This document shows, one piece after another, positions 17,459 to 64,000 of a stretch of 64,000 nt of DNA. Within the stretch, counting starts at the first letter, position 1. Each line of letters opens with the position of its first letter. Made by a program: the position numbers and the translations under genes. Origin of the DNA: Schmidtea nova (Eukaryota); the NCBI GenBank assembly GCA_044892505.1, contig CM097883.1:77562001-77626000 (forward strand), given 5' to 3'. Below the pieces are notes generated by a model. The model made no database searches, was not told where the DNA came from, and saw only the letters and a program-made list of their open reading frames with translations.

Positions 17459-17499
<41 letters not shown>

Positions 17500-26768: not shown

Positions 26769-26819
26769 ATTTCACATTTATTAGTGATCACATGTGTACA
26801 ATCCAATAAAACCTTTATT

Positions 26820-27876
26820 TGTTGGGTTTTCTAATAACAAAAGATTGATCGTTGGTTACTCTGACTCCTCGTGTTCAGACAAATCAATAAACTCCGATTT
26901 TCCCAACGTATATTTGTTATCACACTTTACACTTCTCACTCACAACCAATTTCACAACAATAAATTAATAATCAAACTTTTTCTCTATTCGATCAAGCCT
27001 CGCCTCGGAAGTCTTGACCCTGTGCGATCTGAAAGTAAATATCACCTTTTAATTCCTTTATACGACTCCTTGCCTTCGATTCGATGTGTTTGACTATTTT
27101 GAATTTAATTCACTCAACTCTTTGATTCACTTTTGATATCCTTTAATTTTCTTGATCTGACTTCTTTGATTCCTTAATTTTCCACTTCTCCCAATTTCAC
27201 TTCTTCTCACAATCTCCAAAACCTATTGTCGATTTCTTCTGCCCTACCTAAGGCTAACGCCGAATTTTCTGAATTTGGAGTCTCCTTATATACTCCAATA
27301 ATCATTTTGATTACCAGCGGTTTCCTTTGATATTATGATAAAATAACTGTAATTAATCACTTCTACCGTTCCTTCATGTTATTTCCGATCTTATTTTATT
27401 TACCCTCACTTATCCTGTTGATTCCATAATAGTTCTCTAAAAGTTAAACTGTTTATTTTTCTCGATTGCCGCGCTCGGTTGTTAAAATAATGTCTCTCCA
27501 AAAGTCGTTTTGTTTGTTTTGATAATCGTTCTCCAACGTTCAGTTTGTTTATTTTCCCTAATACCCGTGCTCGAGGTTTCTTCATCTCTCGGGTTCTCCA
27601 TTGGCTCGGACTTCCCATTAGCCCGGGTTTTCCATTAGCCAATTAATTAATTAATTAATGATTTCTGTTTTAACCTTTTTTACCTATTTTCAACCCTTTC
27701 AAGACCTTTTCTGACAATTTCTTGCTCACTATCTTCTTCGCCAATCCCTGATCTACACCTATTCCGTTTTCCAGCTTCGATTTCGATTCTCTTTCATTTC
27801 GTTTCACTTCAATTTTCTTTTGATTCAAAATAATTCTAATTTAATTTAAGATAATTTTAATTTAACAACCTCAACA
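26820..27876 (-). repeat. Element 1 3' LTR
   Basis: Direct repeat of 40110-41166; only two mismatches seen by eye (about 27795 and 27867). Confidence 0.97.
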
Positions 27877-27878
27877 TA

Positions 27879-27889
27879 TCTCCCCCCTT
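27879..27889 (-). other. Polypurine tract of element 1
   Basis: Minus strand AAGGGGGGAGA, 2 nt before the 3' LTR TGTTG. Confidence 0.9.
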
Positions 27890-29108
27890 AAAAAAAATTT
27901 CGTCCTCGAAACAGATGTTTTGAAAGTTATTTTGTACTTATTTATATATACATATACTTACACACACACACACATATATATAAATATATTTTCATATTTA
28001 CATAATTTATTTTTTGATTTATTTCTAAATTTAATTATGAAAATAGTTTTTTGTTTTAAATATAATAAATTTACCATTTAAATTAATTTTATCATATTTT
28101 ATTTGATTATTTTTATTTATTATTTATTTTATACGAATTTTACATTTAAAAATTTTTTTTTTTTTTTCAATTGAATAATAAATAACATTCAGTTCTAAAT
28201 AAATTAAAATGAAAAAAATTATTCGATTCCAAAATCGAAAAATTTAATTATTTATTTACTAAAGTTATCATTTTAGATAACTCTTTAATTATTCTACTTA
28301 TAATTATTCTATATAAAGAGATATTTTTATCTCATTTTCATTTTTCTCCAATTCCCAAAAAAATGAAGGTAAGTTTTGTTATTATAGTTCTTATTTATTA
28401 TATTATTATTTATTTTATCATATTTTATATTATTTACGTTATTACTATATATATACATTATTATATTATTACTATTATTATCATAATCATTATTACTGTT
28501 TTATTATTATTATATAATAATATTATAATGCTATTATTACATTTTCTTAATAGAAAAACCGAAAATGGAAGGAAACTAACATAAAGATGCTCACAATATG
28601 GTGATATTTGAAATCCTAATTAAAACCATTTTTTCCTAAGATTGTCACGTGAACTTATCGATAATATGAATTTATTACGTGCTATCGCACTTATTTGTTT
28701 TGACTTTTATTTTGGAAGTTGTAAAAATACTTTTGAATTACAAAATATTTAATATCAAAATTAGATTTCACTGATTTAATCTATCTATTTTCCATTATAG
28801 CATTTATTAAATCACCTATATATCACTTTAAATGTGTTCATCTAGGAACGTGTGAAAATGTTTGGGATTAATTTGCACAGTCATCTGTGTTGTAAAAGCG
28901 ATGATTAATACCCATTTCATTCTAATAACTATCTGATTCCACTGACATAATTCACTCAATTCTAGTTTTACGGCAACACACATGTATACCTATATATACA
29001 TTTTTACGCATTGCCTATTTATCTATAGAAACGATATTACACTGTAGACTTATGATACTTGTACTACATATATCCCTAAGCAATTGAAATTTTTTAATAT
29101 TCGTTATT

Positions 29109-29306
29109 TTAGGCTCCTAAGTCCGAAGCATTAGTTTGGTTACCGGTCGCCCTTCCGCGACGTCGGGGCCTCAAAAGGACCTTTGGGGTTATGGAAGGCT
29201 TTGCAAAAACTCTCCGCTTTGAAAATGACCCTCCCCACGGGGTTCGGGATGACTTAGTCATCCAAAGTTTTATTATTTTGGACGACGATGATTGACTTTG
29301 ATTCAC
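29109..29306 (-). CDS. Small basic, Arg-rich accessory ORF in the element 1 3' region (hypothetical)
   Basis: KVLLRPRRRGRATG; a GC-richer island in AT-rich DNA, preceded by an AG acceptor-like site. May not be coding. Confidence 0.35.
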   Translation of the reverse strand: MNQSQSSSSKIIKLWMTKSSRTPWGGSFSKRRVFAKPSITPKVLLRPRRRGRATGNQTNASDLGA

Positions 29307-29434
29307 CTAATTCTTATTTATGGTGTTATTTATAATAAATTTGCCTTATTTTAGTTTTAGTTTTCACCATTACTATTTCAAGGACGAAAATTTAAAAAGG
29401 TTATTTCTTAATATTTTTATTACTTCTCACAGTT

Positions 29435-29677
29435 TTAGTCCAAGTTATTCATTTCTCCCTCCTCCATAGTTTCGTCTTCCTGCTCCTGTAGTTTCATTCG
29501 CCATAGAACTACCTCGGCTTCATATCTGAAAAGAAGAATTTCCATTTTTTCAAAACGTCTTTTGACCACCCAATTCTCTTGTTCCAGATCGAAAATTCGT
29601 TTCTCCATTGCCTTCATTTTTTTTCTCATCTCTTTCATGGTGTTAAGGCATTCTTTTAGTGATTCTTCTTCCTGCAT
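29435..29677 (-). CDS. 80-aa coiled-coil accessory ORF in the element 1 3' region (hypothetical)
   Basis: Heptad pattern LKECLNTMKEMRKKMKAMEKRIFDLEQEN with an acidic tail; preceded by TTTAACTTTAG acceptor-like site. Confidence 0.5.
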   Translation of the reverse strand: MQEEESLKECLNTMKEMRKKMKAMEKRIFDLEQENWVVKRRFEKMEILLFRYEAEVVLWRMKLQEQEDETMEEGEMNNLD

Positions 29678-29825
29678 TTCCTAAAGTTAAAGATAATTAA
29701 TACTTTAAATACATCTCTCCTTCCATCGCACAAGGACAGACCCTCCTCAGCAACACTCGATCAACCAAAATATTTTCATTCAGGTCACACATTCCTAATT
29801 TACTTTTAACCATACAGATTATCAA

Positions 29826-29875
<50 letters not shown>

Positions 29876-29905
29876 TATATACATGCATGCCATATAAAAT
29901 CATTG

Positions 29906-31084
29906 TCAATGATCATAGTTAGGTGTCCTTTTACATAATACGATTGTTATTATTAGAAACACTATGGATAATATGAAAAATGCTGTTATCATAAGATAGA
30001 GTAAGTATTCACAGATGATTAATGTTTGGTTCGTTTCTTTTAAAACTAGCTTGCTCATTTGAGTTCGATTAAATTTATTTCGATTCAGGGGTGGGCCCGT
30101 GGTTGCTACTATCATCTGTGTTTGATGTGTGGCTGTTAGGATCAACTCTGGCCTTTTGATCAGTTTTGTTTCTACCAAAACTGTCTGCCAACGATATGGT
30201 TTGTCCATCCACCGCTGGTATTTGATTTTTATCAGGTAATTATCTCCTACATTAGAAGTATTAAATAAAAAGTAACTTTTACCCACATCCAACAAAACGA
30301 TAATTCTTTGATTCTCACTAATAATTACTCTTTCATTGATCATTGATTTTCTGTATATTACTATCGCTTCATACTGCACTTTGAAAATCACCATATTCGA
30401 TACATTTCTTAGGTAAATACTCTGCTTTTCGGTTTTAAACAATGCCCATCTATTGCTCATTATTGTCCCGTTATCGTATAGCATATTTTCATAATAGTTT
30501 GTTAATATGGTATAATTGGCATTCATTTTTAGGTTATAATATCGAGAATACGATTTCCGTGTATTTAATATATCAACAAAGTTTTGAAATATCACTTGTG
30601 CTTTCACCCGTTCACTTGCTATCCAATACACATTTACTCCATTTAATACCGGCTCTATTTCGACTGTATGTCGTAATTCTTTTGTTTGTATTATGACTCG
30701 AATTTGACTATCAAACTTTACCGACGAATTTGTCTCATTTTGTTTTATAAACCACGGATACTTGAAGTTCGCCTTTAATTCTTGTGCCACATACATATTT
30801 CTATCGTAATTAAGAATACTGACCGGCGTGAATGGATCTAAGAGGTTGTTAATTTCTATCTGTTCCGATACCTCACAATGATAGATCCAGACAATATTCG
30901 TATACGTAGAGTATATATTGATCTTTTCCCATAAGGGTATTTTTGTCACTGCATACGGTAAATCGACCTTCCCACCCTTAACACTTGTCAGTGTTAACAG
31001 AGCAATCATTATAAACAACATTTTTGTAATGTAACTGATTGGGACTGGGTTTTTGGTAAATTTTTGTTGAACTATGGCATCCAC
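29906..31084 (-). CDS. 392-aa predicted type I membrane glycoprotein downstream of integrase
   Basis: Signal-like MLFIMIALLTLTSVKG, beta-rich ectodomain with several NxS/T sequons, C-terminal TM YLLYLMITAFFILSIVFLIITIVLC and short tail. Overlaps the integrase tail in the -1 frame. Confidence 0.8.
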   Translation of the reverse strand: MDAIVQQKFTKNPVPISYITKMLFIMIALLTLTSVKGGKVDLPYAVTKIPLWEKINIYSTYTNIVWIYHCEVSEQIEINNLLDPFTPVSILNYDRNMYVAQELKANFKYPWFIKQNETNSSVKFDSQIRVIIQTKELRHTVEIEPVLNGVNVYWIASERVKAQVIFQNFVDILNTRKSYSRYYNLKMNANYTILTNYYENMLYDNGTIMSNRWALFKTEKQSIYLRNVSNMVIFKVQYEAIVIYRKSMINERVIISENQRIIVLLDVGKSYFLFNTSNVGDNYLIKIKYQRWMDKPYRWQTVLVETKLIKRPELILTATHQTQMIVATTGPPLNRNKFNRTQMSKLVLKETNQTLIICEYLLYLMITAFFILSIVFLIITIVLCKRTPNYDH

Positions 31085-31575
31085 TTTTTCTTGGTTTGGT
31101 TTGGTTGAAGTGGATATCTTGTTTCATCGTCTTCTGGCATTAATTTGCATCGATTTGCATGAACTATTATAGGATTAGCTTTTTTACTCCTGAATGGTAG
31201 TAGTTTCAAATTTGTTTCAGTTGTGTCACATACTTTATATGGCCCTTTAAACGGTCTCTGTAATTTTGGTGACATTCCTTTGAGCGGTTCAGGTCTATTG
31301 AGATATACCAAGTCTCCAATTTTGATTCCATGTGGATGTGCTTTTTTATCATAGGCTTCTTTATACTTTTCTTGATTGTGTTTTACCGTTAAACCAGCTT
31401 TTGCCCACACAGACTGCACTCTTTCTTGCATTAATGCTTTATAGTCTGGTATTTCCATATATTGTGTTACCGGCAATTGGAAGTTTAAATCTATCGGCAT
31501 ATTATTTCTTCTTAAATACATCAAATAAAAAGGTGTCTTATTGGATTTATTGCATTTCGGTAAGCAAACAAGCAA
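31072..31575 (-). pseudogene. Frameshifted integrase C-terminus (GPY/F region)
   Basis: KTPFYLMYLR...GDLVYL...PKLQRPFKGPYKV; continues the pol frame that is lost near 31550. Confidence 0.9.
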
Positions 31576-34500
31576 GGCTTTATATATTCATCCCAATCCC
31601 TTTGCTTACTATTAACATACGAAGAAATCATATTTATCAATGTACCGTTAAATCTCTCAACTAAGCCATCGGTTTGTGGATGATAAGGAGAACTGTTCAG
31701 CTTCCAGATTCCAAATAACTCAGTAATTGATTTAAATAATTCGCTTTGAAAGTTTGAGCCCTGATCAGTTAGTAATTTTTTTGGAGTGCCATATCTAAAG
31801 ACAATATTCTCTACGAATATTTTGGCTACCGTATCGGCCTTTTGATTTGGTATGGCGTAAGCTTCCGGCCATCTCGTCAAATAATCACAGAATACTACGA
31901 TACATTTATTTCCTTTTATTGTTTCAGGTAATGGTCCCACAATGTCCATTGCAGTCATCTCCATTGGTGTAGTTGGTACAGGCATTGGTTTTAAAGGTAC
32001 TTTAATTTTATTTCCTGTATTTCTCCTTGTAATACATATTTTACATTTCTTGCACCAATCTCTCACATCTTGCTCCATTAATGGCCAATAATATTTTTGT
32101 TTTAGTCTCGATAAAGTTTTTCTAGCCGATAAGTGCCCTCCTAAAGCTCCATCGTGATATTGCATCAGTAATGAATCTCTCTGTTTTTCAGGAATTATGA
32201 TTAGTATCTCATCGTTTTTTACACATTTTAATATTCCTTCGTGAATTATATATTTGTGATTTTCATTGATTATTTGCTTTAAATTTCTCTCTCTTTCGAC
32301 TGTAATTGCTCGTTCAAACAACTGTTTAAGTTGATTGTCCTTTTTCTGTTCATTTTGTAACTCTATCATATTGTTAACGGCTTTAATTGCGGCAAATATC
32401 GTGCCTTCAATCGTTTCTGTACTACCTTCACTTTCAATGCCTCCATTGGGAATTCTAGACATTGTATCGGCATTTGCATTAGCTTTCCCTGCTCTGTATT
32501 TAATTTCGAAATCATACTCTTGAAGAGCTATTGACCACCTAATTAATTTACTAGCTGAATCTCTATGCTTCATCAACCATTGAAGAGGATTGTGATCAGT
32601 GTATACGATAAATTTCCGTCCCAGCAAGTATTGAATAAACGTAGCGATTCCGTAAACTAACGCTAAGGTTTCTTTTTCAATTGTTGAATAATTTTTTTCA
32701 TGTGGTCTCAGTGACCTGCTTGCATACGCTATCACGTGATCCTTTTCCCCATCTACCTTCTGACCCAACACTGCGCCCAATGCAACGTTACTGGCATCCG
32801 TCATTAACAAGAACAATTTTGTAAAATCTGGGCATCGCAAAATAGGTGTCGTTATTAATTTTTGCTTCAGTGCGTCAAAAGCTTCTTGTTGAGTTTTGTT
32901 CCATATGAACTTGTTATTCTTCTTCAATAATGAATTTAACGGTTGAGCTATATGCGAGAAATTCTTTATAAACTTTCTATAATAGCTTGCTAATCCTAAG
33001 AATTGCCTCACATCATCCGCATTCTTTGGAATTGGATACACCTCCACCTTTTTAATGTTGTCAGGATTTGTTTGTAGACCTCGTCTTGATATTATGTGAC
33101 CAACATACACCACTTCGGACTTTCCCCATTCACACTTCGATGGTTTTATTTTCAATTTTGCTCCTTTTAGTCGTTTAAATACTGCCTCAACATCATCAAG
33201 ATGTTCATCAAAGCTATTTGAAAATATAATAATATCATCAATATAAACTAACGCGTGTTTTAAGCCTCTTAATACAAAATTCATACCTCTTTGAAATGTA
33301 GCCGGGGCTCCCGTCAAACCGAACGGTAGAACATTGAACTCATATAACCCTTTGCCATCTGAAAAGGCTGTCTTCTTTCTATCCTCTTCCTTGACTTTAA
33401 ATTGATTATACCCTTTATTCAAATCAATCACAGTAAAATATTGAGCTTCTCCCATCTGATCGAACATTTCCTGGGGTACAGGAATTGGATATGTATCCTT
33501 TCTTGTTACCTGGTTCAGTTTTCTGTAATCCACACAAAATCGTAAATCTCCGTCTTTTTTCTTTACAATTACAATGGACGCCGAAAACGGTGATGAGCTA
33601 TCTCTGATTATTCCAAAATCTTTCATTGCTTGAATTTGTCGATCACTTTCGGTTTGATGAATATATGGTATTCTGTACGGTTTTATTTTCACCGGGGTTT
33701 CATCCAACAACGAAATTTCATGTTCAATTATATTTGTTAACCCCAAGTCATATTCGTGTCTCGCAAAAATATCCCGGTATCTCTTCAACAATTCTGTAAA
33801 CTTTTGCCTTTGCTCTTCGGTCAAATCAGTACTTACTACTTCAGGTTCTTTATAAATTTTTACGTTTCTAGGAATCTTCCTTTCCGCTTCTATCAACATA
33901 TTAGACAATTTTCCTAGTTTCGTCTTTGGTTTTAGCCGAATTGACTTGTCACCATAATTAGCTATTCGCACTGGTAATAATTGATTTTCCACTTTCACAA
34001 TTTCGTCACACATCGGGGTCTCGTATTTTTCTATTAACTTTTGATTCGGTTCAAATATAAATTCATCATCGTCTACGCCAGCAGCGTTCGCATAATATAT
34101 TATTTCTGTTTGAGGTGGGATGGTTAACGATTGACTGAGAAATACTTCTCCTAAATTATGAATGACTTCGCCACTTTTTCCCACGATCAAATTTTTAGTT
34201 TTAAAATCCAGTAAAATTCCGTCTAACTGCTCCAGTACATCCATTCCAATCAAACACAATACAGGGCTTTTTTCCATAATCTGTACGTTATGTGTAATCT
34301 TTCTGTCACCAATTAGAAGTACCACTTCTATTTCTCCAATTATTCTCAATACGTTTTTAGACAGTGATCTGATTATGCTATTTGATGGTTTTATTTGTCT
34401 TTTTTCCTTTGCCGACAATATCTCTTCTGATATAATTGTATGACTTGATCCTGAATCCACCACAGCCTCCACTCTCTTTTTATTTAGTTGGATTAATATT

Positions 34501-35708
34501 CGTGGTTGTTTGCCAATTTTTGCTAACGTCATCAATACATAATTTCCGGGTAAACCTAACCTGTTTCGTCTTTCGATTTCGGCACTTGTTGGTTCGATTC
34601 TCTCACATTGTAAAGCAATATTTTCGACTGGTTTCATTTCCCTCAATTTTTCGACTGGATATGCTGGTAGTGGTTGGATAAACGATTTTGGTATACACAA
34701 TCTAGAAAAGGTATCCTGATTATCATTATTGGACAGCGATTCTTTTAGCAGTTGATAGTTTTTCAATGTGTTACTTTGCATTCGTTCCTCCGAGTATAAC
34801 GGGGCGGATTCATTGATATTTTCGTCATCATTTTTGTCATCGTTAGAAGTAGTAGTCAAATCGATATAACTTACCTTTTTCTTTTTCATCAGTCGTGTTT
34901 TCAAAGTTTCCATCTCTTTATACTGGTGATGTGTGATAAAAAATCTGGCTAGCAATGGAACGCATCCCATGACTAATTTCCAAGACAATCCCGTAATAGT
35001 ATACAATCTGTGTGTTGACAACACCTGCGAGATTATTACTTTAATCACGATTCCTATTACGTAGATTCCGATTAATCCAGCACAAGCTTGACCAATAAAC
35101 ATGAACTTTCCCCATATCTTTTTCATCGTATTATATGTTGCTCTTTTGTAATGATCAGGTGTTAACAAGTAGTCGTAATTTGCTTTCCCAGTTCCACTCG
35201 GGAGAATCGTGTTCACCATTTCCATAATCACCCTTTCTTTTTTTGATGGAAATAATAAATTTCTCCGGGCCGCTTCAATATCATCACTTGAATACATCCC
35301 ACTTTGCGTCATACTATCTAGCGATGTAAAATTAATCAAATACTCTAATTTGGTCAACTCCAATTTCTCTGGAACTTTCACTCCTCTGTAATCGGGTAGT
35401 GCAATCCATGATTCAGACATCAAGCGATACAGTGGAGCCAATAATCTATTACATTGCAACACTTTGGGCTTCACGCCCTCTTCCAGTAGAATGCGTGTCA
35501 CCGGTTCCATGAATCGCAATTTCTCGTTAAAATTCACTGGCAATTCATTTGTACATTGATCGAATTTCATCAATTTGATAGGTACAGCTTTGCATTTATA
35601 GCTATACAACGCTTCGCCAAAAATTCGAGCAAATACTCCGTTCTCTGATATTAGCATTGGAGCAACTAAATTCGGATTTGTAATAGCCATCGCCATTCTG
35701 TTTCGCAA
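31521..35708 (-). CDS. pol: Glycoprotein C-terminal half + TM, fused in frame to PR-RT-RNaseH-integrase
   Basis: CTNELPV ectodomain motif, hydrophobic segments at about 34930-35115, PR VVDSGS (about 34455), RT YIDD (about 33240), RH TDAS, INT zinc finger (H..GHL..C..C), MDIVGPLP / LTDQG / VERFN. Confidence 0.95.
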   Translation of the reverse strand: MRNRMAMAITNPNLVAPMLISENGVFARIFGEALYSYKCKAVPIKLMKFDQCTNELPVNFNEKLRFMEPVTRILLEEGVKPKVLQCNRLLAPLYRLMSESWIALPDYRGVKVPEKLELTKLEYLINFTSLDSMTQSGMYSSDDIEAARRNLLFPSKKERVIMEMVNTILPSGTGKANYDYLLTPDHYKRATYNTMKKIWGKFMFIGQACAGLIGIYVIGIVIKVIISQVLSTHRLYTITGLSWKLVMGCVPLLARFFITHHQYKEMETLKTRLMKKKKVSYIDLTTTSNDDKNDDENINESAPLYSEERMQSNTLKNYQLLKESLSNNDNQDTFSRLCIPKSFIQPLPAYPVEKLREMKPVENIALQCERIEPTSAEIERRNRLGLPGNYVLMTLAKIGKQPRILIQLNKKRVEAVVDSGSSHTIISEEILSAKEKRQIKPSNSIIRSLSKNVLRIIGEIEVVLLIGDRKITHNVQIMEKSPVLCLIGMDVLEQLDGILLDFKTKNLIVGKSGEVIHNLGEVFLSQSLTIPPQTEIIYYANAAGVDDDEFIFEPNQKLIEKYETPMCDEIVKVENQLLPVRIANYGDKSIRLKPKTKLGKLSNMLIEAERKIPRNVKIYKEPEVVSTDLTEEQRQKFTELLKRYRDIFARHEYDLGLTNIIEHEISLLDETPVKIKPYRIPYIHQTESDRQIQAMKDFGIIRDSSSPFSASIVIVKKKDGDLRFCVDYRKLNQVTRKDTYPIPVPQEMFDQMGEAQYFTVIDLNKGYNQFKVKEEDRKKTAFSDGKGLYEFNVLPFGLTGAPATFQRGMNFVLRGLKHALVYIDDIIIFSNSFDEHLDDVEAVFKRLKGAKLKIKPSKCEWGKSEVVYVGHIISRRGLQTNPDNIKKVEVYPIPKNADDVRQFLGLASYYRKFIKNFSHIAQPLNSLLKKNNKFIWNKTQQEAFDALKQKLITTPILRCPDFTKLFLLMTDASNVALGAVLGQKVDGEKDHVIAYASRSLRPHEKNYSTIEKETLALVYGIATFIQYLLGRKFIVYTDHNPLQWLMKHRDSASKLIRWSIALQEYDFEIKYRAGKANANADTMSRIPNGGIESEGSTETIEGTIFAAIKAVNNMIELQNEQKKDNQLKQLFERAITVERERNLKQIINENHKYIIHEGILKCVKNDEILIIIPEKQRDSLLMQYHDGALGGHLSARKTLSRLKQKYYWPLMEQDVRDWCKKCKICITRRNTGNKIKVPLKPMPVPTTPMEMTAMDIVGPLPETIKGNKCIVVFCDYLTRWPEAYAIPNQKADTVAKIFVENIVFRYGTPKKLLTDQGSNFQSELFKSITELFGIWKLNSSPYHPQTDGLVERFNGTLINMISSYVNSKQRDWDEYIKPCLFAYRNAINPIRHLFI

Positions 35709-35711
35709 AAT

Positions 35712-37925
35712 TTACTTATTTAACTTGCAATCATTTAATATAATTTCTCGATACACACTTTCAACCGTATCTTGGCTAAAATGAAACAGATAATCAATTT
35801 TGTTATTGAAATAATTCGTTAGTTTAATTTCCTCTGAATATAACTTCGTTTGAGCTTCCTCGACAATTCTTTTTGATACGTAAATTCCTTTATAATTTGT
35901 TTCATATACTGTTTGTCCACACTTGGTATTTATACCTTTTCTGAGAAATCTCATCCCATCATTCGGGGATATTGCCATTAATACCGTTGGAGTATCCTTC
36001 ATTCGCAAAGGAGTAATTCTAATCGTTGTATTCATCACTGAATTTAGAATTGTACTTTCTGGTCTCTCTTGAATTTGCTCTCCTGTTATCTCTTTGAAAG
36101 GCATCGATTTTAAATGCGCTAAGTTACACTTTTTCACATTCACGTCGTACACTAAAATTGATTCACCTGTATTACAACTGGTTTCTCTCATATTGCAAAA
36201 TGGATGCGTTTGTAATTTTCCCGTGTCATCATCGAACGATCCATCAAAATATCTCAATTCTGATTCGTACTCTTCTATAACAACGACTTTATCAATAACC
36301 TGTTCACCCACCTTGTGCGATTCACCTTCGCAATCACCATTTGCTTTGATCACCCCTTTTATTGCAATTGTTTCGCGAATTTTGTGATTCAATTTCGCTT
36401 TTAACTTAATTTCCGCATTTATTTTTAATTCTCCTGTTTGAAACGCAGCTAAACAGTTTTCGCGAGTTATCTCAATTACTCTAGGGATTGAATGCATTTT
36501 TATTAACGACGAATGACTCCATTTGCCACAATAAAATGTAAATGTGGTCCTTTTTGCCGTACATTCTCTCACTTTTACTCGTCTAAATCCTGATTCTTGA
36601 TAAACATGATATTTCATCTCACTTGCCCATTTTAAATTTCTCGGATATGCATCCAGACATTCAGCTACATCTACTAGCGAGTATACTTTTCCCATTTCTG
36701 TTTGAGAACAATCATAAGCTACCAATGACGTTGTAGTATTGATAAATCCTAATATTATGATAATAAACATAGATACCCATGGAACTATCATTTTCCCTTT
36801 TTTTGGCTCATACACCCTTTCCAAATTTTCTGGTTTTGGTGTCAAATTTTTCCATCCACCATTACCCTTGATCCAACTATTCACATACGTATTTACCACT
36901 TTTGCTGCTTGTTCAATCCACTTTTCCGATTCATCAGATTCCAGCCAACTGTAGATACCAATTTCGAAAACAATATAAGCAAGGACTGATAATACCACAT
37001 CTTTATTCAAACCGTTTTTAATTAGCTCTTTGATTACTGTTTCGTCGCAAAATATGTCTTCTTTACTAATATTTTTAAGTGCTACAGGAAGTCGTCCTTT
37101 CAGTTCTCTGGCAAGTTGTTGTATGAATTCATCGTTACATATATTCTTTTCATCCAGTGCATATAATTCCGATGCCAACCCTTTAAGAATTAATTTTGTT
37201 TGCTTTACCTCATTTAAGTCTAATTTTTCCACATCACTGGACTCCGTTTTATCTAGATCGTTTAGTTCCTCTTTATTGTTTAACTTGTATTTTCTTCGCT
37301 TCCGGTTGTTCGATTGACCACCGTCTTCTGTTTCTACAAAATTCGATTCGCATTTCATTCTCTCTGCAATTAACATCTCTTCAATTACATTGCTAATCTC
37401 TTGATTTACTGCACAAATTTTATCTGCTTCATTACTAATATTCTCGTTTTGCACTTCACTCAAATCTGTTTGTTTTGATTCGCACTCGTCACACTCGGCT
37501 TCTCTTGGTTCCTCCGTTAATTTGCTTTTGTAATTTTCACACTCGTTTTCGTTCGGTTCCTCAGATAATTCTGTTTTGATCACAGTATTGTTATCATCTT
37601 CTTTTACGATAAAGGGCCAATGAGTTCCATCCTCATAAATATTCATTTGTGTTGTGGCATAGACATTATTTATATAGTTCGGGCTGCCTCCGCAATTGAC
37701 AAAATATTCGTCATCATCTAATTCCACTCCTTTGAAAATCAGTATGATGATTCCATCGGTGCCCAATGTTTCTGCAGCTTTCCGTCGTAATTTCGCCACC
37801 TTTATGCTCCAGTGCTCTTGTAGGTATTCTACTTTTCCATTCATATTTAGAGCTATTACTAAGGATTTTGAAGTATGATCTGATACTCGGTAACCATGAC
37901 CTAGCATTCGTATTACTTCCTTCAA
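35712..37925 (-). CDS. Ubiquitin-like + acidic linker + Bcl-2-like + signal/TM + chuvirus-G-like glycoprotein N-half
   Basis: LIFKGVELDD (Ubl); ELIKNGLN...WIKGNGGW (BH1/BH2-like); hydrophobic MIVPWVSMFIIIILGFI; VAYDC..YSLVDVAEC glycoprotein start. In frame with gag (one TAA at 37989-37991) and with pol (one TAA at 35712-35714). Confidence 0.85.
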   Translation of the reverse strand: MKEVIRMLGHGYRVSDHTSKSLVIALNMNGKVEYLQEHWSIKVAKLRRKAAETLGTDGIIILIFKGVELDDDEYFVNCGGSPNYINNVYATTQMNIYEDGTHWPFIVKEDDNNTVIKTELSEEPNENECENYKSKLTEEPREAECDECESKQTDLSEVQNENISNEADKICAVNQEISNVIEEMLIAERMKCESNFVETEDGGQSNNRKRRKYKLNNKEELNDLDKTESSDVEKLDLNEVKQTKLILKGLASELYALDEKNICNDEFIQQLARELKGRLPVALKNISKEDIFCDETVIKELIKNGLNKDVVLSVLAYIVFEIGIYSWLESDESEKWIEQAAKVVNTYVNSWIKGNGGWKNLTPKPENLERVYEPKKGKMIVPWVSMFIIIILGFINTTTSLVAYDCSQTEMGKVYSLVDVAECLDAYPRNLKWASEMKYHVYQESGFRRVKVRECTAKRTTFTFYCGKWSHSSLIKMHSIPRVIEITRENCLAAFQTGELKINAEIKLKAKLNHKIRETIAIKGVIKANGDCEGESHKVGEQVIDKVVVIEEYESELRYFDGSFDDDTGKLQTHPFCNMRETSCNTGESILVYDVNVKKCNLAHLKSMPFKEITGEQIQERPESTILNSVMNTTIRITPLRMKDTPTVLMAISPNDGMRFLRKGINTKCGQTVYETNYKGIYVSKRIVEEAQTKLYSEEIKLTNYFNNKIDYLFHFSQDTVESVYREIILNDCKLNK

Positions 37926-37988
37926 TTTAACTTGATAGTTTGTTGTTTTATGAATATAAGGTAAAATATTTTCAAATAATTGTTCTTT

Positions 37989-39929
37989 TTATTTTTGATC
38001 AATTTCTGAATTCATTATATAATCAAGGCATTTATTAATTTCATCTTCATCTCCGACATATAGCATATCTCGCAGATCCTGTAATTTTTTCTCCCAACTT
38101 TTATCAGCTAAATTTGAATAATTATTGACATTTAAAATTTTTACCTCGTTTTTATATCCAGGAATTAGACCATAATCGACCAAGAATTCCTCATCCGCTA
38201 ATTGACCAATTTGACGTTGTATAAATTTTATTTGTACTTCATTTCCTTGGTATTTTGACATAATAAGCTTTCTCAAATCTTTTATCTGCCCATCTGGTTT
38301 AATAGAAAAGTGAAATTTTACGTCATCTCCATCGGTGGTTTCTACAAAAATATCAGGCAGACCTTTTGTCAATCTCAAAGCTTTTCCAAATATTTTCATC
38401 AGTTTGGCAATTTCATCATCTTGAGATTTATTGTAGAACTTTGAACATAAATTTAAAATATTTTTCAACTTTCTTTGGCTGAGTTGCATTTGAGATAGTT
38501 CGCTAATCCACTCTTTCAATTTTGGATTATTTGTTTCCATCCTCGTATACCATCTTTCTATTTTATTTATCAATAATATAGCTTTTTCGTTTGACAAGTC
38601 GTTTTTCGCTTTATCTCCAAGACTTTCTTTTTCATCGGTTTCTTTTTCGTACACCATACAAGAATCAATTTCCTCATCTGATTCGAATTTTGACATTAGT
38701 TTGTTTAATTTCTGTCTCATTTCCCGGAATTCATTTTCCATTTTCTCCTTAAACTCGTCCTTTTGAGCATAGGCTACATTAGCGTTGGATGATTCATCCT
38801 GAAATCTAATAGATCTCTTCAGTATTGGTCTGCTGAATCTTTCTGCATTCTTTGGGCATGATCGAGCCATGTGGCCATAACCTTTGCATGAATGACATTG
38901 AATTTGTCCATTTGTATTTACTTTATCTCGTTGCGGTGACGGAGATGTTGATGGTGATCGATTTTTAGAAAAGCAATTTCTGCTAATGTGACTCGTTTTC
39001 CCACATCGATAACATTCCAAGTTGCTATTGTTTGGTTTGTTTTCCACAAATATTCTTTTAGGACTACTATTTCTGCCATATTTGAACCAACATTGGTTCG
39101 AATAATGTCCGATTTTTTTGCAGTGCTCGCATACGACACTATTTGATCTCTCGGTTAGCTGGCTACCAAAAGCTGCTTTGTTAGTTTCTATCTTAGTACC
39201 TAATCTGGGAGAACTGATTGTTTGGATTGGTCTCTTGGATTCCCATTGATTTCTGACAGGTGTTATCGACCTTTCTCTCCTTTCAACATTTGCTGCGAAT
39301 GCTTCAGATTTTCTGGTGCTTTTTAAATTCAGTTCAATTTTCATTGCTTTCTTCACAAGTTCATCAAAATTTGCAAAATCTACATAACACAATGCCTTCT
39401 TTATTTCGGGATGAGCTCCAGTTATGAATTGATCTTGAAGCAGTTCTTTAACCTGCTTCACCATATCAACTTGCTCAGGCTTTGCTTCAAAGGCTTTATC
39501 TGCTAAAGTATTTAGATGATATGCAAACTCACTTACCGATTCCGTTGGATTTTGAACTCTGTTGTAAAATCTCTGTCGCATTATCCTTTTGATATCTCCA
39601 CCTACCAATTTCGTTGCCATTGCATCCTTCAATTTGGCCCAATCATTTCCAACTGTCCTTTTGTCCACTTGTTGCCAAGCTTCTCTTGCGGCTCCCTTTA
39701 AGTATAACGGAAATCTTTGTACCATTATTGCTTGTGACCATCCATAAGCTGCGGCATACATATAATAATCTCCCATGAAGTCTGCAAACTCAACCGGATC
39801 TCCACCATACTGATTCACCGGTAATTTTTGACAGCTTGCAAAATCAATCATCTCTCTATTGAGAGGCATAACAGCATTATCATTTGCCATTTGTGTTTGT
39901 TTCATACTTCTGAGGTTATATCGACTCAC
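37989..39929 (-). CDS. gag: Gag (capsid + 3 CCHC zinc knuckles) with a C-terminal ubiquitin-like extension
   Basis: Retrotransposon capsid motifs (FPLYLKGAAREAW, QNPTESVSEFA); CEHCKKIGHYSNQC, CYRCGKTSHISRNC, CHSCKGYGHMARSC; IFVETTDG...QLADEEFLVDYGL. The track start is GTG; first ATG at 39905. Confidence 0.93.
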   Translation of the reverse strand: MSRYNLRSMKQTQMANDNAVMPLNREMIDFASCQKLPVNQYGGDPVEFADFMGDYYMYAAAYGWSQAIMVQRFPLYLKGAAREAWQQVDKRTVGNDWAKLKDAMATKLVGGDIKRIMRQRFYNRVQNPTESVSEFAYHLNTLADKAFEAKPEQVDMVKQVKELLQDQFITGAHPEIKKALCYVDFANFDELVKKAMKIELNLKSTRKSEAFAANVERRERSITPVRNQWESKRPIQTISSPRLGTKIETNKAAFGSQLTERSNSVVCEHCKKIGHYSNQCWFKYGRNSSPKRIFVENKPNNSNLECYRCGKTSHISRNCFSKNRSPSTSPSPQRDKVNTNGQIQCHSCKGYGHMARSCPKNAERFSRPILKRSIRFQDESSNANVAYAQKDEFKEKMENEFREMRQKLNKLMSKFESDEEIDSCMVYEKETDEKESLGDKAKNDLSNEKAILLINKIERWYTRMETNNPKLKEWISELSQMQLSQRKLKNILNLCSKFYNKSQDDEIAKLMKIFGKALRLTKGLPDIFVETTDGDDVKFHFSIKPDGQIKDLRKLIMSKYQGNEVQIKFIQRQIGQLADEEFLVDYGLIPGYKNEVKILNVNNYSNLADKSWEKKLQDLRDMLYVGDEDEINKCLDYIMNSEIDQK

Positions 39930-40083
39930 TTTGATCTAAAATTCAAAATAAAAACAAATTAAATTTACTTGTCCTCAGCCAACTTTCAAACTTTCAAACT
40001 CAACTTCAAATTTTCAATACTTCTCTATCAACTTTATATCGAGTCGCAAATATCTATTTTCAATAATCTTTCACCAACGTTAG

Positions 40084-40101
40084 ATCACGTCGGGCTCACC
40101 A
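40084..40101 (-). other. Primer-binding site, tRNA-Trp type
   Basis: TGGTGAGCCCGACGTGAT; differs at one position from the complement of the common tRNA-Trp 3' end (TGGTGACCCCGACGTGAT). Starts 8 nt from the LTR. Confidence 0.85.
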
Positions 40102-40109
40102 ATAATATA

Positions 40110-41166
40110 TGTTGGGTTTTCTAATAACAAAAGATTGATCGTTGGTTACTCTGACTCCTCGTGTTCAGACAAATCAATAAACTCCGATTTTCCCAACGTA
40201 TATTTGTTATCACACTTTACACTTCTCACTCACAACCAATTTCACAACAATAAATTAATAATCAAACTTTTTCTCTATTCGATCAAGCCTCGCCTCGGAA
40301 GTCTTGACCCTGTGCGATCTGAAAGTAAATATCACCTTTTAATTCCTTTATACGACTCCTTGCCTTCGATTCGATGTGTTTGACTATTTTGAATTTAATT
40401 CACTCAACTCTTTGATTCACTTTTGATATCCTTTAATTTTCTTGATCTGACTTCTTTGATTCCTTAATTTTCCACTTCTCCCAATTTCACTTCTTCTCAC
40501 AATCTCCAAAACCTATTGTCGATTTCTTCTGCCCTACCTAAGGCTAACGCCGAATTTTCTGAATTTGGAGTCTCCTTATATACTCCAATAATCATTTTGA
40601 TTACCAGCGGTTTCCTTTGATATTATGATAAAATAACTGTAATTAATCACTTCTACCGTTCCTTCATGTTATTTCCGATCTTATTTTATTTACCCTCACT
40701 TATCCTGTTGATTCCATAATAGTTCTCTAAAAGTTAAACTGTTTATTTTTCTCGATTGCCGCGCTCGGTTGTTAAAATAATGTCTCTCCAAAAGTCGTTT
40801 TGTTTGTTTTGATAATCGTTCTCCAACGTTCAGTTTGTTTATTTTCCCTAATACCCGTGCTCGAGGTTTCTTCATCTCTCGGGTTCTCCATTGGCTCGGA
40901 CTTCCCATTAGCCCGGGTTTTCCATTAGCCAATTAATTAATTAATTAATGATTTCTGTTTTAACCTTTTTTACCTATTTTCAACCCTTTCAAGACCTTTT
41001 CTGACAATTTCTTGCTCACTATCTTCTTCGCCAATCCCTGATCTACACCTATTCCGTTTTCCAGCTTCGATTTCGATTCTCTTTCGTTTCGTTTCACTTC
41101 AATTTTCTTTTGATTCAAAATAATTCTAATTTAATTTAAGATAATTTTAATTTAACCACCTCAACA
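40110..41166 (-). repeat. Element 1 5' LTR
   Basis: Direct repeat of 26820-27876, TGTTG...CAACA. Confidence 0.97.
40575..40583 (-). promoter_or_regulatory. TATA box in the element 1 5' LTR
   Basis: GTATATAAG on the minus strand; the same motif sits at equivalent positions in the solo LTR (11033) and the element 2 LTR (54291). Confidence 0.6.
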
Positions 41167-41645
41167 TATTTACCCTAGTAAAATTAATTAAAAAATTTCA
41201 AAATGCATGTAGATATTGCATTTTGTATGTTTATTTTAGGAATAAATAATTTTATCATCAAAGCCTCACAATTCACATGTTCATAATAATTTTTAAAACC
41301 CCGATAAAGTATTTTGAAATTGGAAATATAAATGGTCTTTTTGCAAGTCTTCTTATGCTCAATAATTTTACTCTTCTCTTGAACTCGTGTACAGGGATGA
41401 CATGCAGTCTCTCCAATGTATGTGACATTACACTCATTACAAATAAGGATGTTAATATCGTTTTTTGGCAAACCGATTATCGTTTCAATAAAACCGACTT
41501 TAAACCGATTATTGTTTTTATCGTCATAGAAAAATATAATTATTTGTATTTAGGGCTTTGAGTATTTTGCCGCTTGAATGAGCAGTGGGTCACCTACTCG
41601 ATAAAAAAATATTCGTATATTAAAAAAGTAAATAAGTCAAATAAG

Positions 41646-43261: not shown

Positions 43262-43771
43262 AGTTTTAAATTCAAATTTTTAATTTATATAAGTTTTTAT
43301 TTTAAAATTGTTTAATGTTGTATTGATTTTCGCTGTAACAATATATTTATGACTGACTATAACTAATGTACTTTACGAGCGATTATATCACATAATAATA
43401 ACTGGACTAGAGAATGCGGTCATATAATAGATTTAGCTTCTTTATACTAAGTGATTGTCCAATATCTAGTATCTTGAGTATTATGAGTGGGAGTATTTTT
43501 GACAATATTCTGCGACTATTGGATCTGGGTCATCCACTGTCTCACATTCTGCAGATGCTTGCAGCCGACAGTCTATTTCTTAGAATTCAACCAAATTAAC
43601 TTGCCACTGGCGACTTATCCTAATAGTAGGCTGTGGGAGGTAACTCAACTGTCAATTTGTCACTGTTAGGGCACAGCAATTAAATTTGTTCTAGTTTCAG
43701 GGTATGTAGAAAATCTCGGTAACAGCTTTATTCCTTAAAATTGAGAAACGCAGCAGACGATGCCTTTAAAC

Positions 43772-57008: not shown

Positions 57009-57471
57009 CTTCGTTTTTGATTGGTATCGAATTGATTTCTTGATATATTGATTTGAGAGATGATTAATAAGGTTTTGACGGTTTAACAGAGATATAATTG
57101 AATATATTGAGATATATGGGTAATTGTCGTAACGATTCGATTGGTCTATAGAATTGACGAGATTGATTGGGTATTTTGTATAGAGATAATTAGTAGGGTT
57201 TTTTGATTGTTTGTTGTGACAGTTTAAAAAAGAGATGATTGTATTTATTGAGATTTTTGAATGGTTGTCGCAATGATTTGATTGGTGTGTAGAATTCACG
57301 AGATTGATTGGGTTTTCGGAGTTTGTTGGAACTTGCTTTGTTTTGCTCGTGTATTCTTTTCTAAAAATAAAGGATAAAGTTTTTTGTTTAAGGCGTATTG
57401 TCGGTTTAACCTTATACGCTATATAAATACGAATATATATGATTTTAATTATTATTATTGACCAAAACGTA

Positions 57472-63800: not shown

Positions 63801-64000
63801 CAATCATATGCTACCATTGCATTGCCCCCCTTGATTAAATCTAATAACAAAGTGATTATGACTATTACTATGGAGGTTATCGATTTACTCTCTGTCTTTG
63901 GTTTTACTGTTGCTTTCTTTATTAATTGTTTTATTACATCATCTGTATCACTCTCTTTATTCGTCGTATCTTTATCATATAATACTTTCCATCCTCCTTT
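60806..64000 (-). CDS. BH2-like motif + signal/TM + chuvirus-G-like glycoprotein + TM + protease + RT start (open at window edge)
   Basis: The frame is open from 64000: KGGWKVLY...SIVIVIITLLLDLIKGGNA-MVAYDC..YSLLDVENC...CTNELPV...WGYFAVLG (TM)...ALVDTGA (PR)...IKQRPY. Confidence 0.92.
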   Translation of the reverse strand, partial: KGGWKVLYDKDTTNKESDTDDVIKQLIKKATVKPKTESKSITSIVIVIITLLLDLIKGGNAMVAYDCQNPKWGQKYSLLDVENCPEANPTKLIMSEPQIFHVYQESDFIHTEAKECIVKYQEEAYICHVGARTVLKPTWTPEAVILSPIECEDAFKTKKVKYSGHKGIELEARIGAKMRQDINVVGWTSKGGYCEGGEYTIWGEKLSNVVVRRHYMVELRKFKASFDSSSKKMMIYKFCTLEESYCDTGESMLIYKIDKYDCQLTKLKSLKFREIKGKQFTEVDSKRVRDQKRKTTIVQEKDTPTIYMSESENEAMRFVSKRKSVKCGKEIIQTNYEGIYISKEEVKDAKQKVNKFDVKLASYFNNKIDFFYHNQLVQLDKVYQSTIMSDCKLNREILRTKMAVAVTNQDLMAPIIFSEEGTFARIVGEVIQTFQCKPVSVSLATNNQCTNELPVIYKGERVYLQPITRILTEKTYIPRKIEKCTNLLDPLYKINDEMWISMSDRKEAMKPLKLELIELEKRLEFKEINDMDSNGIYTREAIESARKHMLFPNEKERVLSIMVNRVIEGSYGGNYNFDVLLSKEYFKKVAYKVLYSIWGYFAVLGNMFSTILGIYYTVALLKMICSSLVSLKQLKQVFGNSYKLLACLCPFIAKYLITAKHDKEIRLIKVQRNEERQLLVDDENDEEIIKAHISHEGNVPQQGLFENQREQLKELQENIEIKIPRENKNCHCEPKKIYGCYSLEVETMERLDAANEARPRLRIIINNIIINALVDTGAATSLIREDQLTDDQKRNIMSTTDKVVSLSAHRIPLKGDIELIVETPEQVINHIFKVVQECNSICILGIDILNKLENCIIDLTDNTIKRKAIKHKSKFTEVVALESFELEYECDHIIPLRVNIKSEDTFIFEPETAIIQNQNIMLTNECVIPRKGIIPLRIANYEKSNVKIHKGTKLGKLFKGELEKTYEVSEISVMNNNGKGVVEPSKINNIKSYDKVKINNEYLTITQQAQLQTLIDKYSDVFAKHEFDLGDTDIIKHVIDTGNARPIKQRPYSVPYKLREEIKR

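What the first reader, a model, noticed from the sequence alone, without database searches (positions are those of the whole stretch)
36730..37200. Bcl-2-like domain whose tail anchor doubles as the glycoprotein signal peptide
Seen: ELIKNGLNKDVVLSVLAY (BH1-like; NWGR replaced by NKDV) and YVNSWIKGNGGWKNL (BH2-like), with an N-to-W spacing of 44 residues versus 45 in Bcl-2 (N143-W188), followed by a hydrophobic helix that leads straight into the glycoprotein. Element 2 shows KGGWKVLY at the same place. Established: large DNA viruses carry divergent vBcl-2 proteins to block apoptosis. Inference: signal peptidase cleavage would leave a membrane-anchored vBcl-2, giving a retroelement its own apoptosis modulator (or a BH3-independent, Bcl-2-fold immune antagonist).
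Basis: partly seen in the sequence, partly recalled or inferred. Interest (0 to 1): 0.9.

Follow-up and report, generated by a model that had tools for sequence, protein, structure and literature searches.

The report
Bcl-2-like domain in a retroelement polyprotein
A retrovirus-like mobile element in this AT-rich animal genome really does encode a diverged Bcl-2-fold domain just before the signal peptide of its envelope glycoprotein, but the same arrangement has already been reported for the planarian "Burro" elements and its function remains untested.

Summary
Both quoted motifs lie on the minus strand at 36975-37028 and 36843-36887, with N-to-W spacing of 44. They belong to a ~125-residue helical domain (36843-37217) inside the gag-env-pol polyprotein of a 14.35-kb LTR element (26820-41166).

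The likeness to Bcl-2 is more than chance:
- Pfam PF00452 is the only hit of the domain (E 0.009). It is hit independently by 6 of 7 relatives (best 3.4e-5), all below the curated cut-off.
- The PDB search improves from E 0.013 to 3e-4 with a family profile.
- An AlphaFold model (pLDDT 72.8) has only Bcl-2 family proteins among its top 50 Foldseek hits.
- GGW is kept in 7 of 8 copies. The BH1 NWGR signature is not kept.

The hydrophobic segment that follows has the anatomy of a cleavable signal peptide in 10 of 10 relatives. It leads into a rhabdovirus-G-like class III fusion glycoprotein.

The architecture matches the published planarian Burro/GYPSM1 elements, which carry a BCL2-like motif and an in-frame env between gag and pol. 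This is therefore a new, compact member of a known kind. The anti-apoptotic function and the "retained anchor" are inferences. This copy's polyprotein frame has two in-frame stops and one frameshift.

The parts
26820..41166 (-). Element 1: a complete LTR retroelement (14,347 bp), Ty3/gypsy-type, Burro-like in architecture. It is flanked by a 4-bp AATA duplication at 26816-26819 and 41167-41170.
   Evidence: The 1064-nt LTR alignment is 99.7% identical. TG...CA termini and flanks were read.
40110..41166 (-). 5' LTR
26820..27876 (-). 3' LTR, preceded by a purine-rich tract
40083..40101 (-). Putative primer-binding site (starts TGG, 8 nt after the 5' LTR)
   Evidence: Read. The complementarity to a tRNA 3' end is my inference and was not tested.
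31072..39929 (-). The gag-(UBL-like x2)-Bcl-2-like-env-PR-RT-RNaseH-IN polyprotein gene, given as one part. It is interrupted by 2 in-frame stops and 1 frameshift (counts only).
38856..39713 (-). Gag core: Retrotrans_gag (39486-39713) and three CCHC zinc knuckles (38856-39131)
38160..38330 (-). Ubiquitin-like segment 1 (weak)
   Evidence: BLASTP E 6e-4 to the stretch of relative L003 that carries a weak Pfam ubiquitin match. It has no Pfam or PDB hit of its own.
37656..37925 (-). Ubiquitin-like segment 2 (weak)
   Evidence: BLASTP E 6e-7 to the same L003 stretch. It has no Pfam or PDB hit of its own.
36843..37217 (-). Bcl-2-like helical domain (about 125 aa, eight predicted helices). The BH1-equivalent is at 36975-37028 and the BH2-like W..GGW at 36843-36887. 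The central hydrophobic helix is at about 36942-36998.
36726..36800 (-). Internal signal peptide, or putative retained membrane anchor. It has a basic n-region, an uncharged hydrophobic run, and a polar c-region with T at -3 and S at -1.
34818..36725 (-). Class III (rhabdovirus-G-like) fusion glycoprotein, PF24664. It comprises the ectodomain, a single transmembrane helix (35010-35105) and a tail. It is broken by one in-frame stop.
34212..34511 (-). Retroviral aspartyl protease
32514..33566 (-). Reverse transcriptase (33090-33566) and RNase H (32514-32903)
31141..32195 (-). Integrase (H2C2 zinc finger, core, C-terminal part). It is broken by one frameshift.
29906..31084 (-). Downstream ORF of 392 aa. 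It has an N-terminal hydrophobic segment, a C-terminal transmembrane helix and 8 N-glycosylation sequons, and no recognisable homologue.
63818..64000 (-). Element 2: the last residues of its Bcl-2-like domain (KGGWKVLY, 63977-64000, cut by the window edge), the linker and the signal peptide ahead of its glycoprotein.

Best explanation
Shown:
- Element 1 is a young LTR retroelement of the Ty3/gypsy type. Gag, a class III rhabdovirus-G-like envelope glycoprotein and pol lie in one reading frame.
- Between gag and env sits a ~125-residue all-helical domain that is a diverged homologue of the Bcl-2 family. It has the Bcl-2 helical bundle, a conserved BH2-like W..GGW, and an invariant Tyr in the central hydrophobic helix. 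It has no NWGR.
- The domain is conserved at 18-29% identity in every relative found. It is always followed, after a variable linker of about 14-50 residues, by a segment with full signal-peptide anatomy and a conserved mature N-terminus x-x-A-Y/F-D-C.
- The polyprotein has exactly two membrane segments.

Inferred:
- During translation, gag, the ubiquitin-like segments and the Bcl-2-like domain stay in the cytosol.
- The hydrophobic segment inserts N-cytosol/C-lumen and sends the G ectodomain into the ER. The G transmembrane helix brings protease-RT-integrase back to the cytosol.
- Signal peptidase cuts two residues before AYDC. This would leave the Bcl-2-like domain held on the cytosolic face of the membrane by the uncleaved signal peptide. 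It is the same topology as a tail-anchored Bcl-2, and resembles the way the flavivirus capsid is held by the prM signal.
- The most likely role is to modulate a host survival or stress pathway at the ER or outer membranes while the element is expressed. Because the canonical BH1 groove residues are replaced, the mode of action may not be classical BH3 sequestration.

The arrangement is that already described for planarian Burro/GYPSM1 elements. This copy is a compact relative, and its own frame is interrupted by 2 stops and 1 frameshift.
For: Sequence:
- PF00452 is the only Pfam hit of the domain (E 0.009, profile positions 4-100 of 100).
- Six of 7 relatives hit PF00452 independently (3.4e-5 to 0.12).
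- The PDB search gives E 0.013 with one sequence, 6.6e-4 with a 5-sequence profile and 3e-4 with 7 sequences. The hits are almost all Bcl-xL/Bcl-2, aligned across BH1 to BH2.

Structure:
- AlphaFold2 with a 5-row alignment gives pLDDT 72.8 and pTM 0.68, with eight helices.
- The Foldseek top 50 in PDB are all Bcl-2 family, with probability 0.99-1.00 (1.00 in 49 of 50) and TM mostly 0.42-0.60 (one hit 0.38/0.39), over 131-151 columns.
- The top BFVD hits are viral Bcl-2 homologues.

Conservation: G-G-W is kept at 6/7, 7/7 and 7/7, plus element 2. The helix-5 Tyr is kept at 7/7.

Signal peptide: 10 of 10 relatives have a basic n-region, an uncharged run of 12-22 residues and small residues at -3/-1.

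Topology: there are only two hydrophobic membrane-length segments in the polyprotein, besides the domain's own core helix.

Architecture and literature.
Against: - No member reaches the Pfam gathering score (best 24.8 against 31.4 bits; window 17.0).
- A search of 1.84 billion representative proteins with the single domain found only one relative and no cellular Bcl-2 at E<=0.001.
- The model is of moderate confidence, and rmsd to solved structures is 5-9 Å.
- The BH1 NWGR equivalents are N 2/6, W 0/6, G 0/6 and R 0/6, although K is 4/6 at the R position.
- The hydrophobic run is of signal-peptide length in most copies (12-16), so stable anchoring after cleavage is not assured.
- There is no evidence here for cleavage, expression or any effect on cell death.
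- This copy's glycoprotein and integrase are broken.
Confidence: 0.6

Rival explanations
1. The domain has the Bcl-2 fold but no role in cell death. One possibility is a membrane-proximal structural adaptor, matrix-like, that couples Gag to the membrane and the glycoprotein tail during particle assembly. Another is an antagonist of innate signalling, like the poxvirus Bcl-2-fold proteins that have lost BH3 binding.
For: The BH1 groove signature is replaced in all copies. The domain always sits between gag and the membrane-inserting segment of env, in one polyprotein. That is where a matrix-like function would be placed. That Bcl-2-fold proteins of poxviruses act on NF-kB/TLR signalling is established knowledge, not tested here.
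Against: Sequence similarity is closest to the multi-BH pro-survival proteins Bcl-xL and Bcl-2, not to the sequence-orphan poxvirus fold members. BH2 is strongly kept. Published Burro elements also carry BIR and MATH_TRAF_C motifs, which points to meddling with apoptosis and ubiquitin pathways.
Confidence: 0.27
2. The domain is a Bax/Bak-like membrane-permeabilising, pro-death module that helps particles or the element leave the cell.
For: The fold is shared by pore-forming members. A very hydrophobic central helix is present. Bax and Bak structures appear among weak Foldseek hits of the low-confidence model.
Against: Bax and Bak are absent from the top 50 hits of the better model and from the 60 best sequence hits listed, which are Bcl-xL/Bcl-2 apart from two designed proteins. 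Killing the cell would work against an element that must be inherited.
Confidence: 0.05
3. The likeness to Bcl-2 is a chance similarity of an unrelated helical linker region.
For: All sequence scores are below curated thresholds. The single-sequence model was poor and its Foldseek hits were not significant.
Against: The same family is hit independently by 6 of 7 sequences that are only 18-29% identical to one another, and no other family is shared. The E-value improves as the profile deepens. The fold search returns only Bcl-2 proteins over the full domain length. Others reached the same annotation for Burro elements.
Confidence: 0.05

Closest known systems
Burro / GYPSM1 giant gypsy-like LTR retrotransposons of planarians (Jurka 2007; Grohme et al. 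2018; Arkhipova & Yushenova 2019, PMC6431247)
   Same: Both have a Gag with Retrotrans_gag and three CCHC knuckles, then a ubiquitin/SUMO-like segment, then a BCL2-like motif, then an env with mononegavirus-type glycoprotein homology in frame between gag and pol, then PR-RT-RH-IN. Both sit in an AT-rich genome crowded with such elements.
   Different: This element is 14.3 kb, not >30 kb. It has no Pfam-detectable MATH_TRAF_C, BIR, ankyrin, Smc or dUTPase. A metagenomic relative, L003, does carry ankyrin repeats and an extra protease-like domain. No Burro sequence was at hand, so direct sequence relatedness and the host species were not tested.
Cellular pro-survival Bcl-2 / Bcl-xL
   Same: Both have the helical bundle with a central hydrophobic helix and BH2 W..GGW. 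The BH1-to-BH2 spacing agrees within one residue. A hydrophobic membrane segment with N-cytosol/C-lumen orientation lies about 20 residues or more downstream.
   Different: Identity is only 12-19% in structural alignments. NWGR is not kept. The domain is embedded in a ~2,900-residue retroelement polyprotein. The downstream hydrophobic segment is a co-translational cleavable signal peptide of another protein, not a post-translationally inserted C-terminal tail.
Viral Bcl-2 homologues of large DNA viruses (e.g. ASFV A179L, canarypox CNP058, herpesvirus and iridovirus vBcl-2)
   Same: Both are diverged Bcl-2 folds carried by a mobile or infectious genome. They appear among the best fold matches.
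   Different: Those are separate genes of DNA viruses. This one is a domain of a gag-env-pol polyprotein of a reverse-transcribing element.
Internal signal peptides retained as anchors in viral polyproteins (flavivirus capsid-prM, hepacivirus core-E1); from established knowledge, not tested here
   Same: A cytosolic structural part is followed by a signal sequence that translocates the next glycoprotein. Signal peptidase cleavage leaves the upstream protein membrane-anchored.
   Different: Those are RNA-virus polyproteins. Here the retained anchor would hold a Bcl-2-fold domain still joined to gag, unless the element's protease cuts it free.
Env-carrying Ty3/gypsy elements (errantiviruses and 'ancient errantiviruses'; Chary & Hayashi 2026, PMC13524379)
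   Same: Both are Ty3/gypsy elements with a captured viral fusogen, including class III types.
   Different: The env types that paper classifies are F-like or herpesvirus-gB-like. Arkhipova & Yushenova note that env in other gypsy-like elements is a separate ORF. That paper does not mention Bcl-2. Here env is rhabdovirus-G-like (PF24664) and lies in frame between gag and pol.

Membership tests
Bcl-2 family (Pfam PF00452) | Sequence match to the family profile at or above the curated gathering score (31.4 bits) | tested here: not met
   The window domain scores 17.0 bits (E 0.009) and the best relative 24.8 bits (E 3.4e-5).
Bcl-2 family (Pfam PF00452) | Consistent match of independent, diverged relatives to the same profile over its full length | tested here: met
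   Six of 7 members match, covering profile positions 4/5-100 in the full-length members. No other family is shared. The PDB profile E-value improves to 3e-4.
Bcl-2 family (Pfam PF00452) | Bcl-2 fold: a helical bundle around a central hydrophobic helix | tested here: met
   The AF2 model has pLDDT 72.8 and pTM 0.68. The Foldseek top 50 PDB hits are all Bcl-2 family, with probability 0.99-1.00 and TM mostly 0.42-0.60. Confidence is moderate, and this is a prediction, not a solved structure.
Bcl-2 family (Pfam PF00452) | BH2 motif (W-x3-G-G-W) | tested here: met
   First W 4/7 (Y 2/7), G 6/7, G 7/7, W 7/7. Element 2 also reads GGW.
Bcl-2 family (Pfam PF00452) | BH1 motif (N-W-G-R) | tested here: not met
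   At the equivalent columns: N 2/6, W 0/6, G 0/6, R 0/6 (K 4/6).
Bcl-2 family (Pfam PF00452) | BH3 and BH4 motifs | tested here: inconclusive
   Helices are predicted at the expected places, and the Pfam alignment reaches profile position 4. No motif was recognisable by eye, and these motifs are weak in many true members.
Bcl-2 family (Pfam PF00452) | C-terminal hydrophobic membrane anchor after the domain | tested here: inconclusive
   A hydrophobic segment follows in 10 of 10 relatives, but it has signal-peptide anatomy and is internal to the polyprotein.
Bcl-2 family (Pfam PF00452) | Binding of BH3 ligands or regulation of cell death | not testable with these tools
   No functional data are available.
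Burro/GYPSM1-like LTR retroelements | Gag with CCHC knuckles, a ubiquitin-like segment, a BCL2-like motif and a mononegavirus-like env in frame ahead of PR-RT-RH-IN | tested here: met
   compared with the description in PMC6431247.
Burro/GYPSM1-like LTR retroelements | Giant size (>30 kb) with MATH_TRAF_C, BIR, ankyrin, Smc and dUTPase motifs | tested here: not met
   The element is 14.35 kb and none of these families appears in the Pfam scan.
Burro/GYPSM1-like LTR retroelements | Sequence relatedness to Burro consensus sequences; planarian host | not testable with these tools
   No Burro sequence or host label was available. The window's protein is not on record, and Grohme 2018 is not held.
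Cleavable signal peptide | Basic n-region, hydrophobic h-region, polar c-region with small residues at -3 and -1 | tested here: met
   Ten of 10 sequences. Residue -3 is T/S/G/A and -1 is S/G/A/T. This was judged by rule, not by a trained predictor.

The most novel reading that the evidence does not exclude
The hydrophobic segment is at once the cleavable signal peptide of the class III glycoprotein and the membrane anchor of a retroelement-encoded Bcl-2-fold protein. This could be the remnant of a captured tail-anchored host Bcl-2 whose tail was co-opted as the env signal. The domain would then be a working host-pathway modulator, kept across a wide, old lineage of env-carrying gypsy elements that reaches beyond the published planarian Burro families. 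That would make it the first reverse-transcribing element shown to carry its own Bcl-2.
Probability: 0.3. Interest if true: 0.7.

Novelty: new member of a known kind. Interest (0 to 1): 0.45.

Why it matters
Bcl-2 homologues are well known in large DNA viruses, but for reverse-transcribing elements they have been noted only in passing, as a Pfam-type motif in planarian Burro elements.

This window adds four points:
- The domain is a conserved, foldable Bcl-2 bundle in a compact relative and in several diverged metagenomic copies.
- BH2 is kept while BH1 is lost.
- The domain is always coupled to the env signal peptide. This gives a simple topological model for how one polyprotein places a Bcl-2-fold domain on the cytosolic face, a fusogen in the lumen and the enzymes back in the cytosol.
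- If the domain is active, these abundant elements, which are expressed in differentiated planarian tissues (PMC8532177), would carry their own handle on host cell survival.

Tried and rejected
- A word-indexed protein search with the domain region inside its 737-aa frame piece found nothing.
- An exhaustive HMMER search of 1.84 billion representatives with the single domain found one relative only and no cellular Bcl-2 at E<=0.001. With a database of that size, a 17-25-bit similarity cannot reach significance.
- A profile search with domain, signal peptide and glycoprotein start found only two short glycoprotein fragments.
- Single-sequence AlphaFold gave pLDDT 50, and its Foldseek hits, though Bcl-2 family, were not significant.
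I did not resend those.
- The ubiquitin-like guess for two segments got no Pfam or PDB support directly. It has only indirect support through relative L003.
- The downstream 392-aa ORF and the glycoprotein N-half have no PDB sequence relatives.
- The host species could not be identified.
- Grohme et al. 2018 could not be read, so the Burro BCL2-like motif is cited through PMC6431247.
- The chance-similarity reading was considered and rejected (see rivals).
Full report
**What is at the coordinates.** The window is AT-rich (26-41% GC) and holds five N runs, none inside the feature. None was filled.

The finding lies on the minus strand inside an LTR retroelement, element 1:
- The two LTRs are 1064 aligned nt at 99.7% identity (26816-27879 and 40106-41169).
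- The termini are TG...CA at 26820/27876 and 40110/41166. There is a 4-bp AATA flank on both sides, a purine-rich tract before the 3' LTR, and a TGG-starting primer-binding-like site after the 5' LTR.

Pfam shows the following, all in one reading frame:
- a Gag (Retrotrans_gag and three CCHC knuckles);
- a glycoprotein matching PF24664 Monjiviricetes_fusion (E 1.5e-32 and 1.4e-48 for its two pieces);
- aspartyl protease, RT, RNase H and integrase.

That frame is interrupted in this copy by two in-frame stops and one frameshift. One stop is in the glycoprotein and the frameshift is in the integrase. I give counts only.

**The observation.** Both quoted peptides are there: ELIKNGLNKDVVLSVLAY at 36975-37028 and YVNSWIKGNGGWKNL at 36843-36887. 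The N-to-W spacing is 44. A hydrophobic segment follows (36726-36800) and then the glycoprotein.

A second, 36%-identical element on the same strand runs off the window. It reads KGGWKVLY at 63977-64000, followed by a linker, a hydrophobic segment and the same glycoprotein.

**Is it Bcl-2-like beyond chance? Sequence.**
- In the 737-residue frame piece, PF00452 (Bcl-2) is the only Pfam hit besides the glycoprotein (E 0.095).
- With the domain alone it is the only hit (E 0.009, 17 bits, profile positions 4-100 of 100).
- A phmmer search of PDB gives Bcl-xL/Bcl-2 as nearly all the best hits (E from 0.013). The alignment runs from BH1 to BH2 and differs in length by one residue.

*Relatives.* Protein and metagenome searches found relatives with the same layout:
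- P0001 (L001);
- P0004 (L002);
- P0003 (L004, cut);
- L005 and L006.

These were reached only by searching with the finding's own protein. The relatives are 18-29% identical to the window domain.

*Results with the relatives.*
- Scanned one by one, 6 of 7 hit PF00452 (3.4e-5, 0.0038, 0.0054, 0.009, 0.024, 0.12). No other family is shared. None reaches the gathering score of 31.4 bits.
- A profile of five and then seven sequences improves the PDB E-value to 6.6e-4 and 3e-4. The listed hits are again Bcl-xL/Bcl-2, apart from two designed proteins. A signal that rises as the profile deepens is what homology predicts.

**Is it Bcl-2-like beyond chance? Structure.**
- AlphaFold2 without an alignment was poor (pLDDT 50).
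- With a five-row alignment (A4) it gave pLDDT 72.8 and pTM 0.68, with eight helices.
- Foldseek against PDB returns only Bcl-2 family proteins in the top 50: Bcl-2, Bcl-xL, ASFV A179L and canarypox CNP058. Probability is 0.99-1.00 (1.00 in 49 of 50) and TM is mostly 0.42-0.60 (one hit 0.38/0.39). The alignments span 131-151 columns and E is 2e-3 to 2e-2.
- Against BFVD the best hits are viral Bcl-2 homologues.
- The poor single-sequence model also lists Bcl-2 proteins first, but not significantly.

The fold assignment is therefore supported at moderate confidence.

**Motifs, by column counts on A3.**
- BH2: first W 4/7 (Y 2/7), G 6/7, G 7/7, W 7/7, followed by K 6/7. Element 2 adds another GGW.
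- An invariant Tyr sits in the central hydrophobic helix (7/7).
- BH1 NWGR equivalents: N 2/6, W 0/6, G 0/6, R 0/6 (K 4/6).

Since the Gly and Arg of BH1 line the BH3-binding groove in canonical members (established knowledge), classical BH3 sequestration is not implied.

**The hydrophobic segment.** In all ten sequences that cover the junction, the segment has:
- a basic n-region;
- an uncharged run of 12-22 residues (12-16 in eight of ten);
- a short polar c-region with T/S/G/A at -3 and S/G/A/T at -1;
- then a conserved x-x-A-Y/F-D-C.

This is the anatomy of a cleavable signal peptide, by the -3/-1 rule (established knowledge), rather than that of a ~20-residue tail anchor. The distance from GGW to the predicted cut varies from 42 to 76 residues, so the linker is free to change but the order is fixed.

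A hydropathy scan finds only two membrane-length segments in the polyprotein, this one and the glycoprotein's own transmembrane helix. The third hydrophobic stretch is the core helix of the Bcl-2-like domain.

**How it most likely works.** Shown: the order of parts, their conservation and the two membrane segments.

Inferred:
- Gag, the ubiquitin-like segments and the Bcl-2-like domain are cytosolic.
- The signal segment inserts N-in/C-out and translocates the G ectodomain.
- The G transmembrane helix returns the protease, RT and integrase to the cytosol.
- Signal peptidase cuts before the conserved N-terminus. This leaves the upstream part held on the cytosolic membrane face by the signal peptide. 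That is the topology of a tail-anchored Bcl-2 and recalls the flavivirus capsid anchor.

Whether the anchor persists is unknown. So is whether the element's protease frees the domain from Gag, and what the domain does. I rate the readings as follows:
- A survival or stress-pathway modulator is most likely.
- A non-apoptotic Bcl-2-fold role (assembly adaptor or signalling antagonist) is a serious rival.
- A pore-forming role is unlikely.
- Chance similarity is unlikely.

**What is known.** Arkhipova and Yushenova (2019, PMC6431247) describe the planarian Burro/GYPSM1 elements, citing Jurka 2007 and Grohme et al. 2018.
- They are giant gypsy-like LTR elements whose single ORF holds Gag with CCHC knuckles and MATH_TRAF_C.
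- A Ubi2/SUMO-like motif and a BCL2-like motif follow.
- PR, dUTPase and RT come last.
- The authors suggest meddling with apoptosis and ubiquitination as something still to be tested.

The present element has the same order of parts. Two weak ubiquitin-like segments are linked to a Pfam ubiquitin match through relative L003. The element differs in being 14.3 kb and lacking the other accessory motifs. L003 has ankyrin repeats and an extra protease-like domain.

Later literature found here does not treat the domain further. The 2026 survey of env-carrying gypsy elements does not mention it.

The finding is therefore a new, compact member of a known kind. What this analysis adds is the fold support, the BH2-yes/BH1-no pattern, the conservation in diverged copies, and the signal-peptide junction.

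1. All comparisons rest on tool output.
2. Before I began counting breaks, I worked out in my reasoning where an in-frame stop lies.
3. In one script the frame was translated as it stands, stops included, solely to count stops. Nothing was saved, joined or replaced.

Consensus lines printed by the alignment and HMMER tools were not used.

Noticed in passing
window 37656-37925 and 38160-38330 (-): Two tandem segments on either side of the gag end resemble each other's counterpart in relative L003. That L003 stretch has a weak Pfam ubiquitin match (E 0.0034). They are probably the Ubi2/SUMO-like motif reported for Burro, here duplicated.
   Followed up: partly
window 29906-31084 (-): An intact 392-aa ORF lies after pol, in the usual env position. 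It has an N-terminal hydrophobic segment, a C-terminal transmembrane helix and 8 N-glycosylation sequons. It has no Pfam or PDB relative, and no similarity to the 834-aa ORF at the same place in element 2. This may be a second, unknown membrane glycoprotein in an element that already has a class III fusogen.
   Followed up: partly
window 55035-64000 (-): Element 2 is a second, 36-49% identical element of the same kind. It holds glycoprotein-PR, then RT-RNaseH-IN, then an 834-aa ORF with no Pfam hit. It is cut by the window end, so its gag and most of its Bcl-2-like domain are not seen.
   Followed up: partly
window 50486-54270 (+): An ordinary small gypsy-type element (PR-RT-RNaseH-IN in one 1109-aa ORF) lies between two 131-nt direct repeats that are 100% identical.
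   Followed up: partly
window 20181-20927 (-): An ORF with a DDE_3 (Tc1/mariner-type) transposase domain, E 6.6e-26.
   Followed up: no
window 14521-14803 and 17179-17461: A 283-nt inverted repeat pair (93.6% identical) flanks a 284-aa ORF with no Pfam hit (15654-16508). It is possibly a DNA transposon with terminal inverted repeats.
   Followed up: no
window 41646-44425 (-): A run of short ORFs just outside the 5' LTR looks, by eye, like decayed hAT-type transposase pieces. The one piece scanned gave no Pfam hit at E<=0.001.
   Followed up: no
L003 11271-14964: This metagenomic relative carries ankyrin repeats and a duplicated aspartyl-protease-like domain between env and RT. It is closer to the accessory-rich published Burro elements than the window's copy is.
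   Followed up: partly
P0006 (656 aa, MetaClust): A predicted protein that fuses eIF3-subunit/PCI domains to a fragment 55% identical to this glycoprotein. It is probably a gene-model chimera over an element insertion in a related host genome.
   Followed up: no
L001 325-5824: In this contig the Bcl-2-like domain and the start of the glycoprotein end abruptly and are followed by an unrelated gag-pol. It looks like a nested insertion or an assembly join.
   Followed up: no
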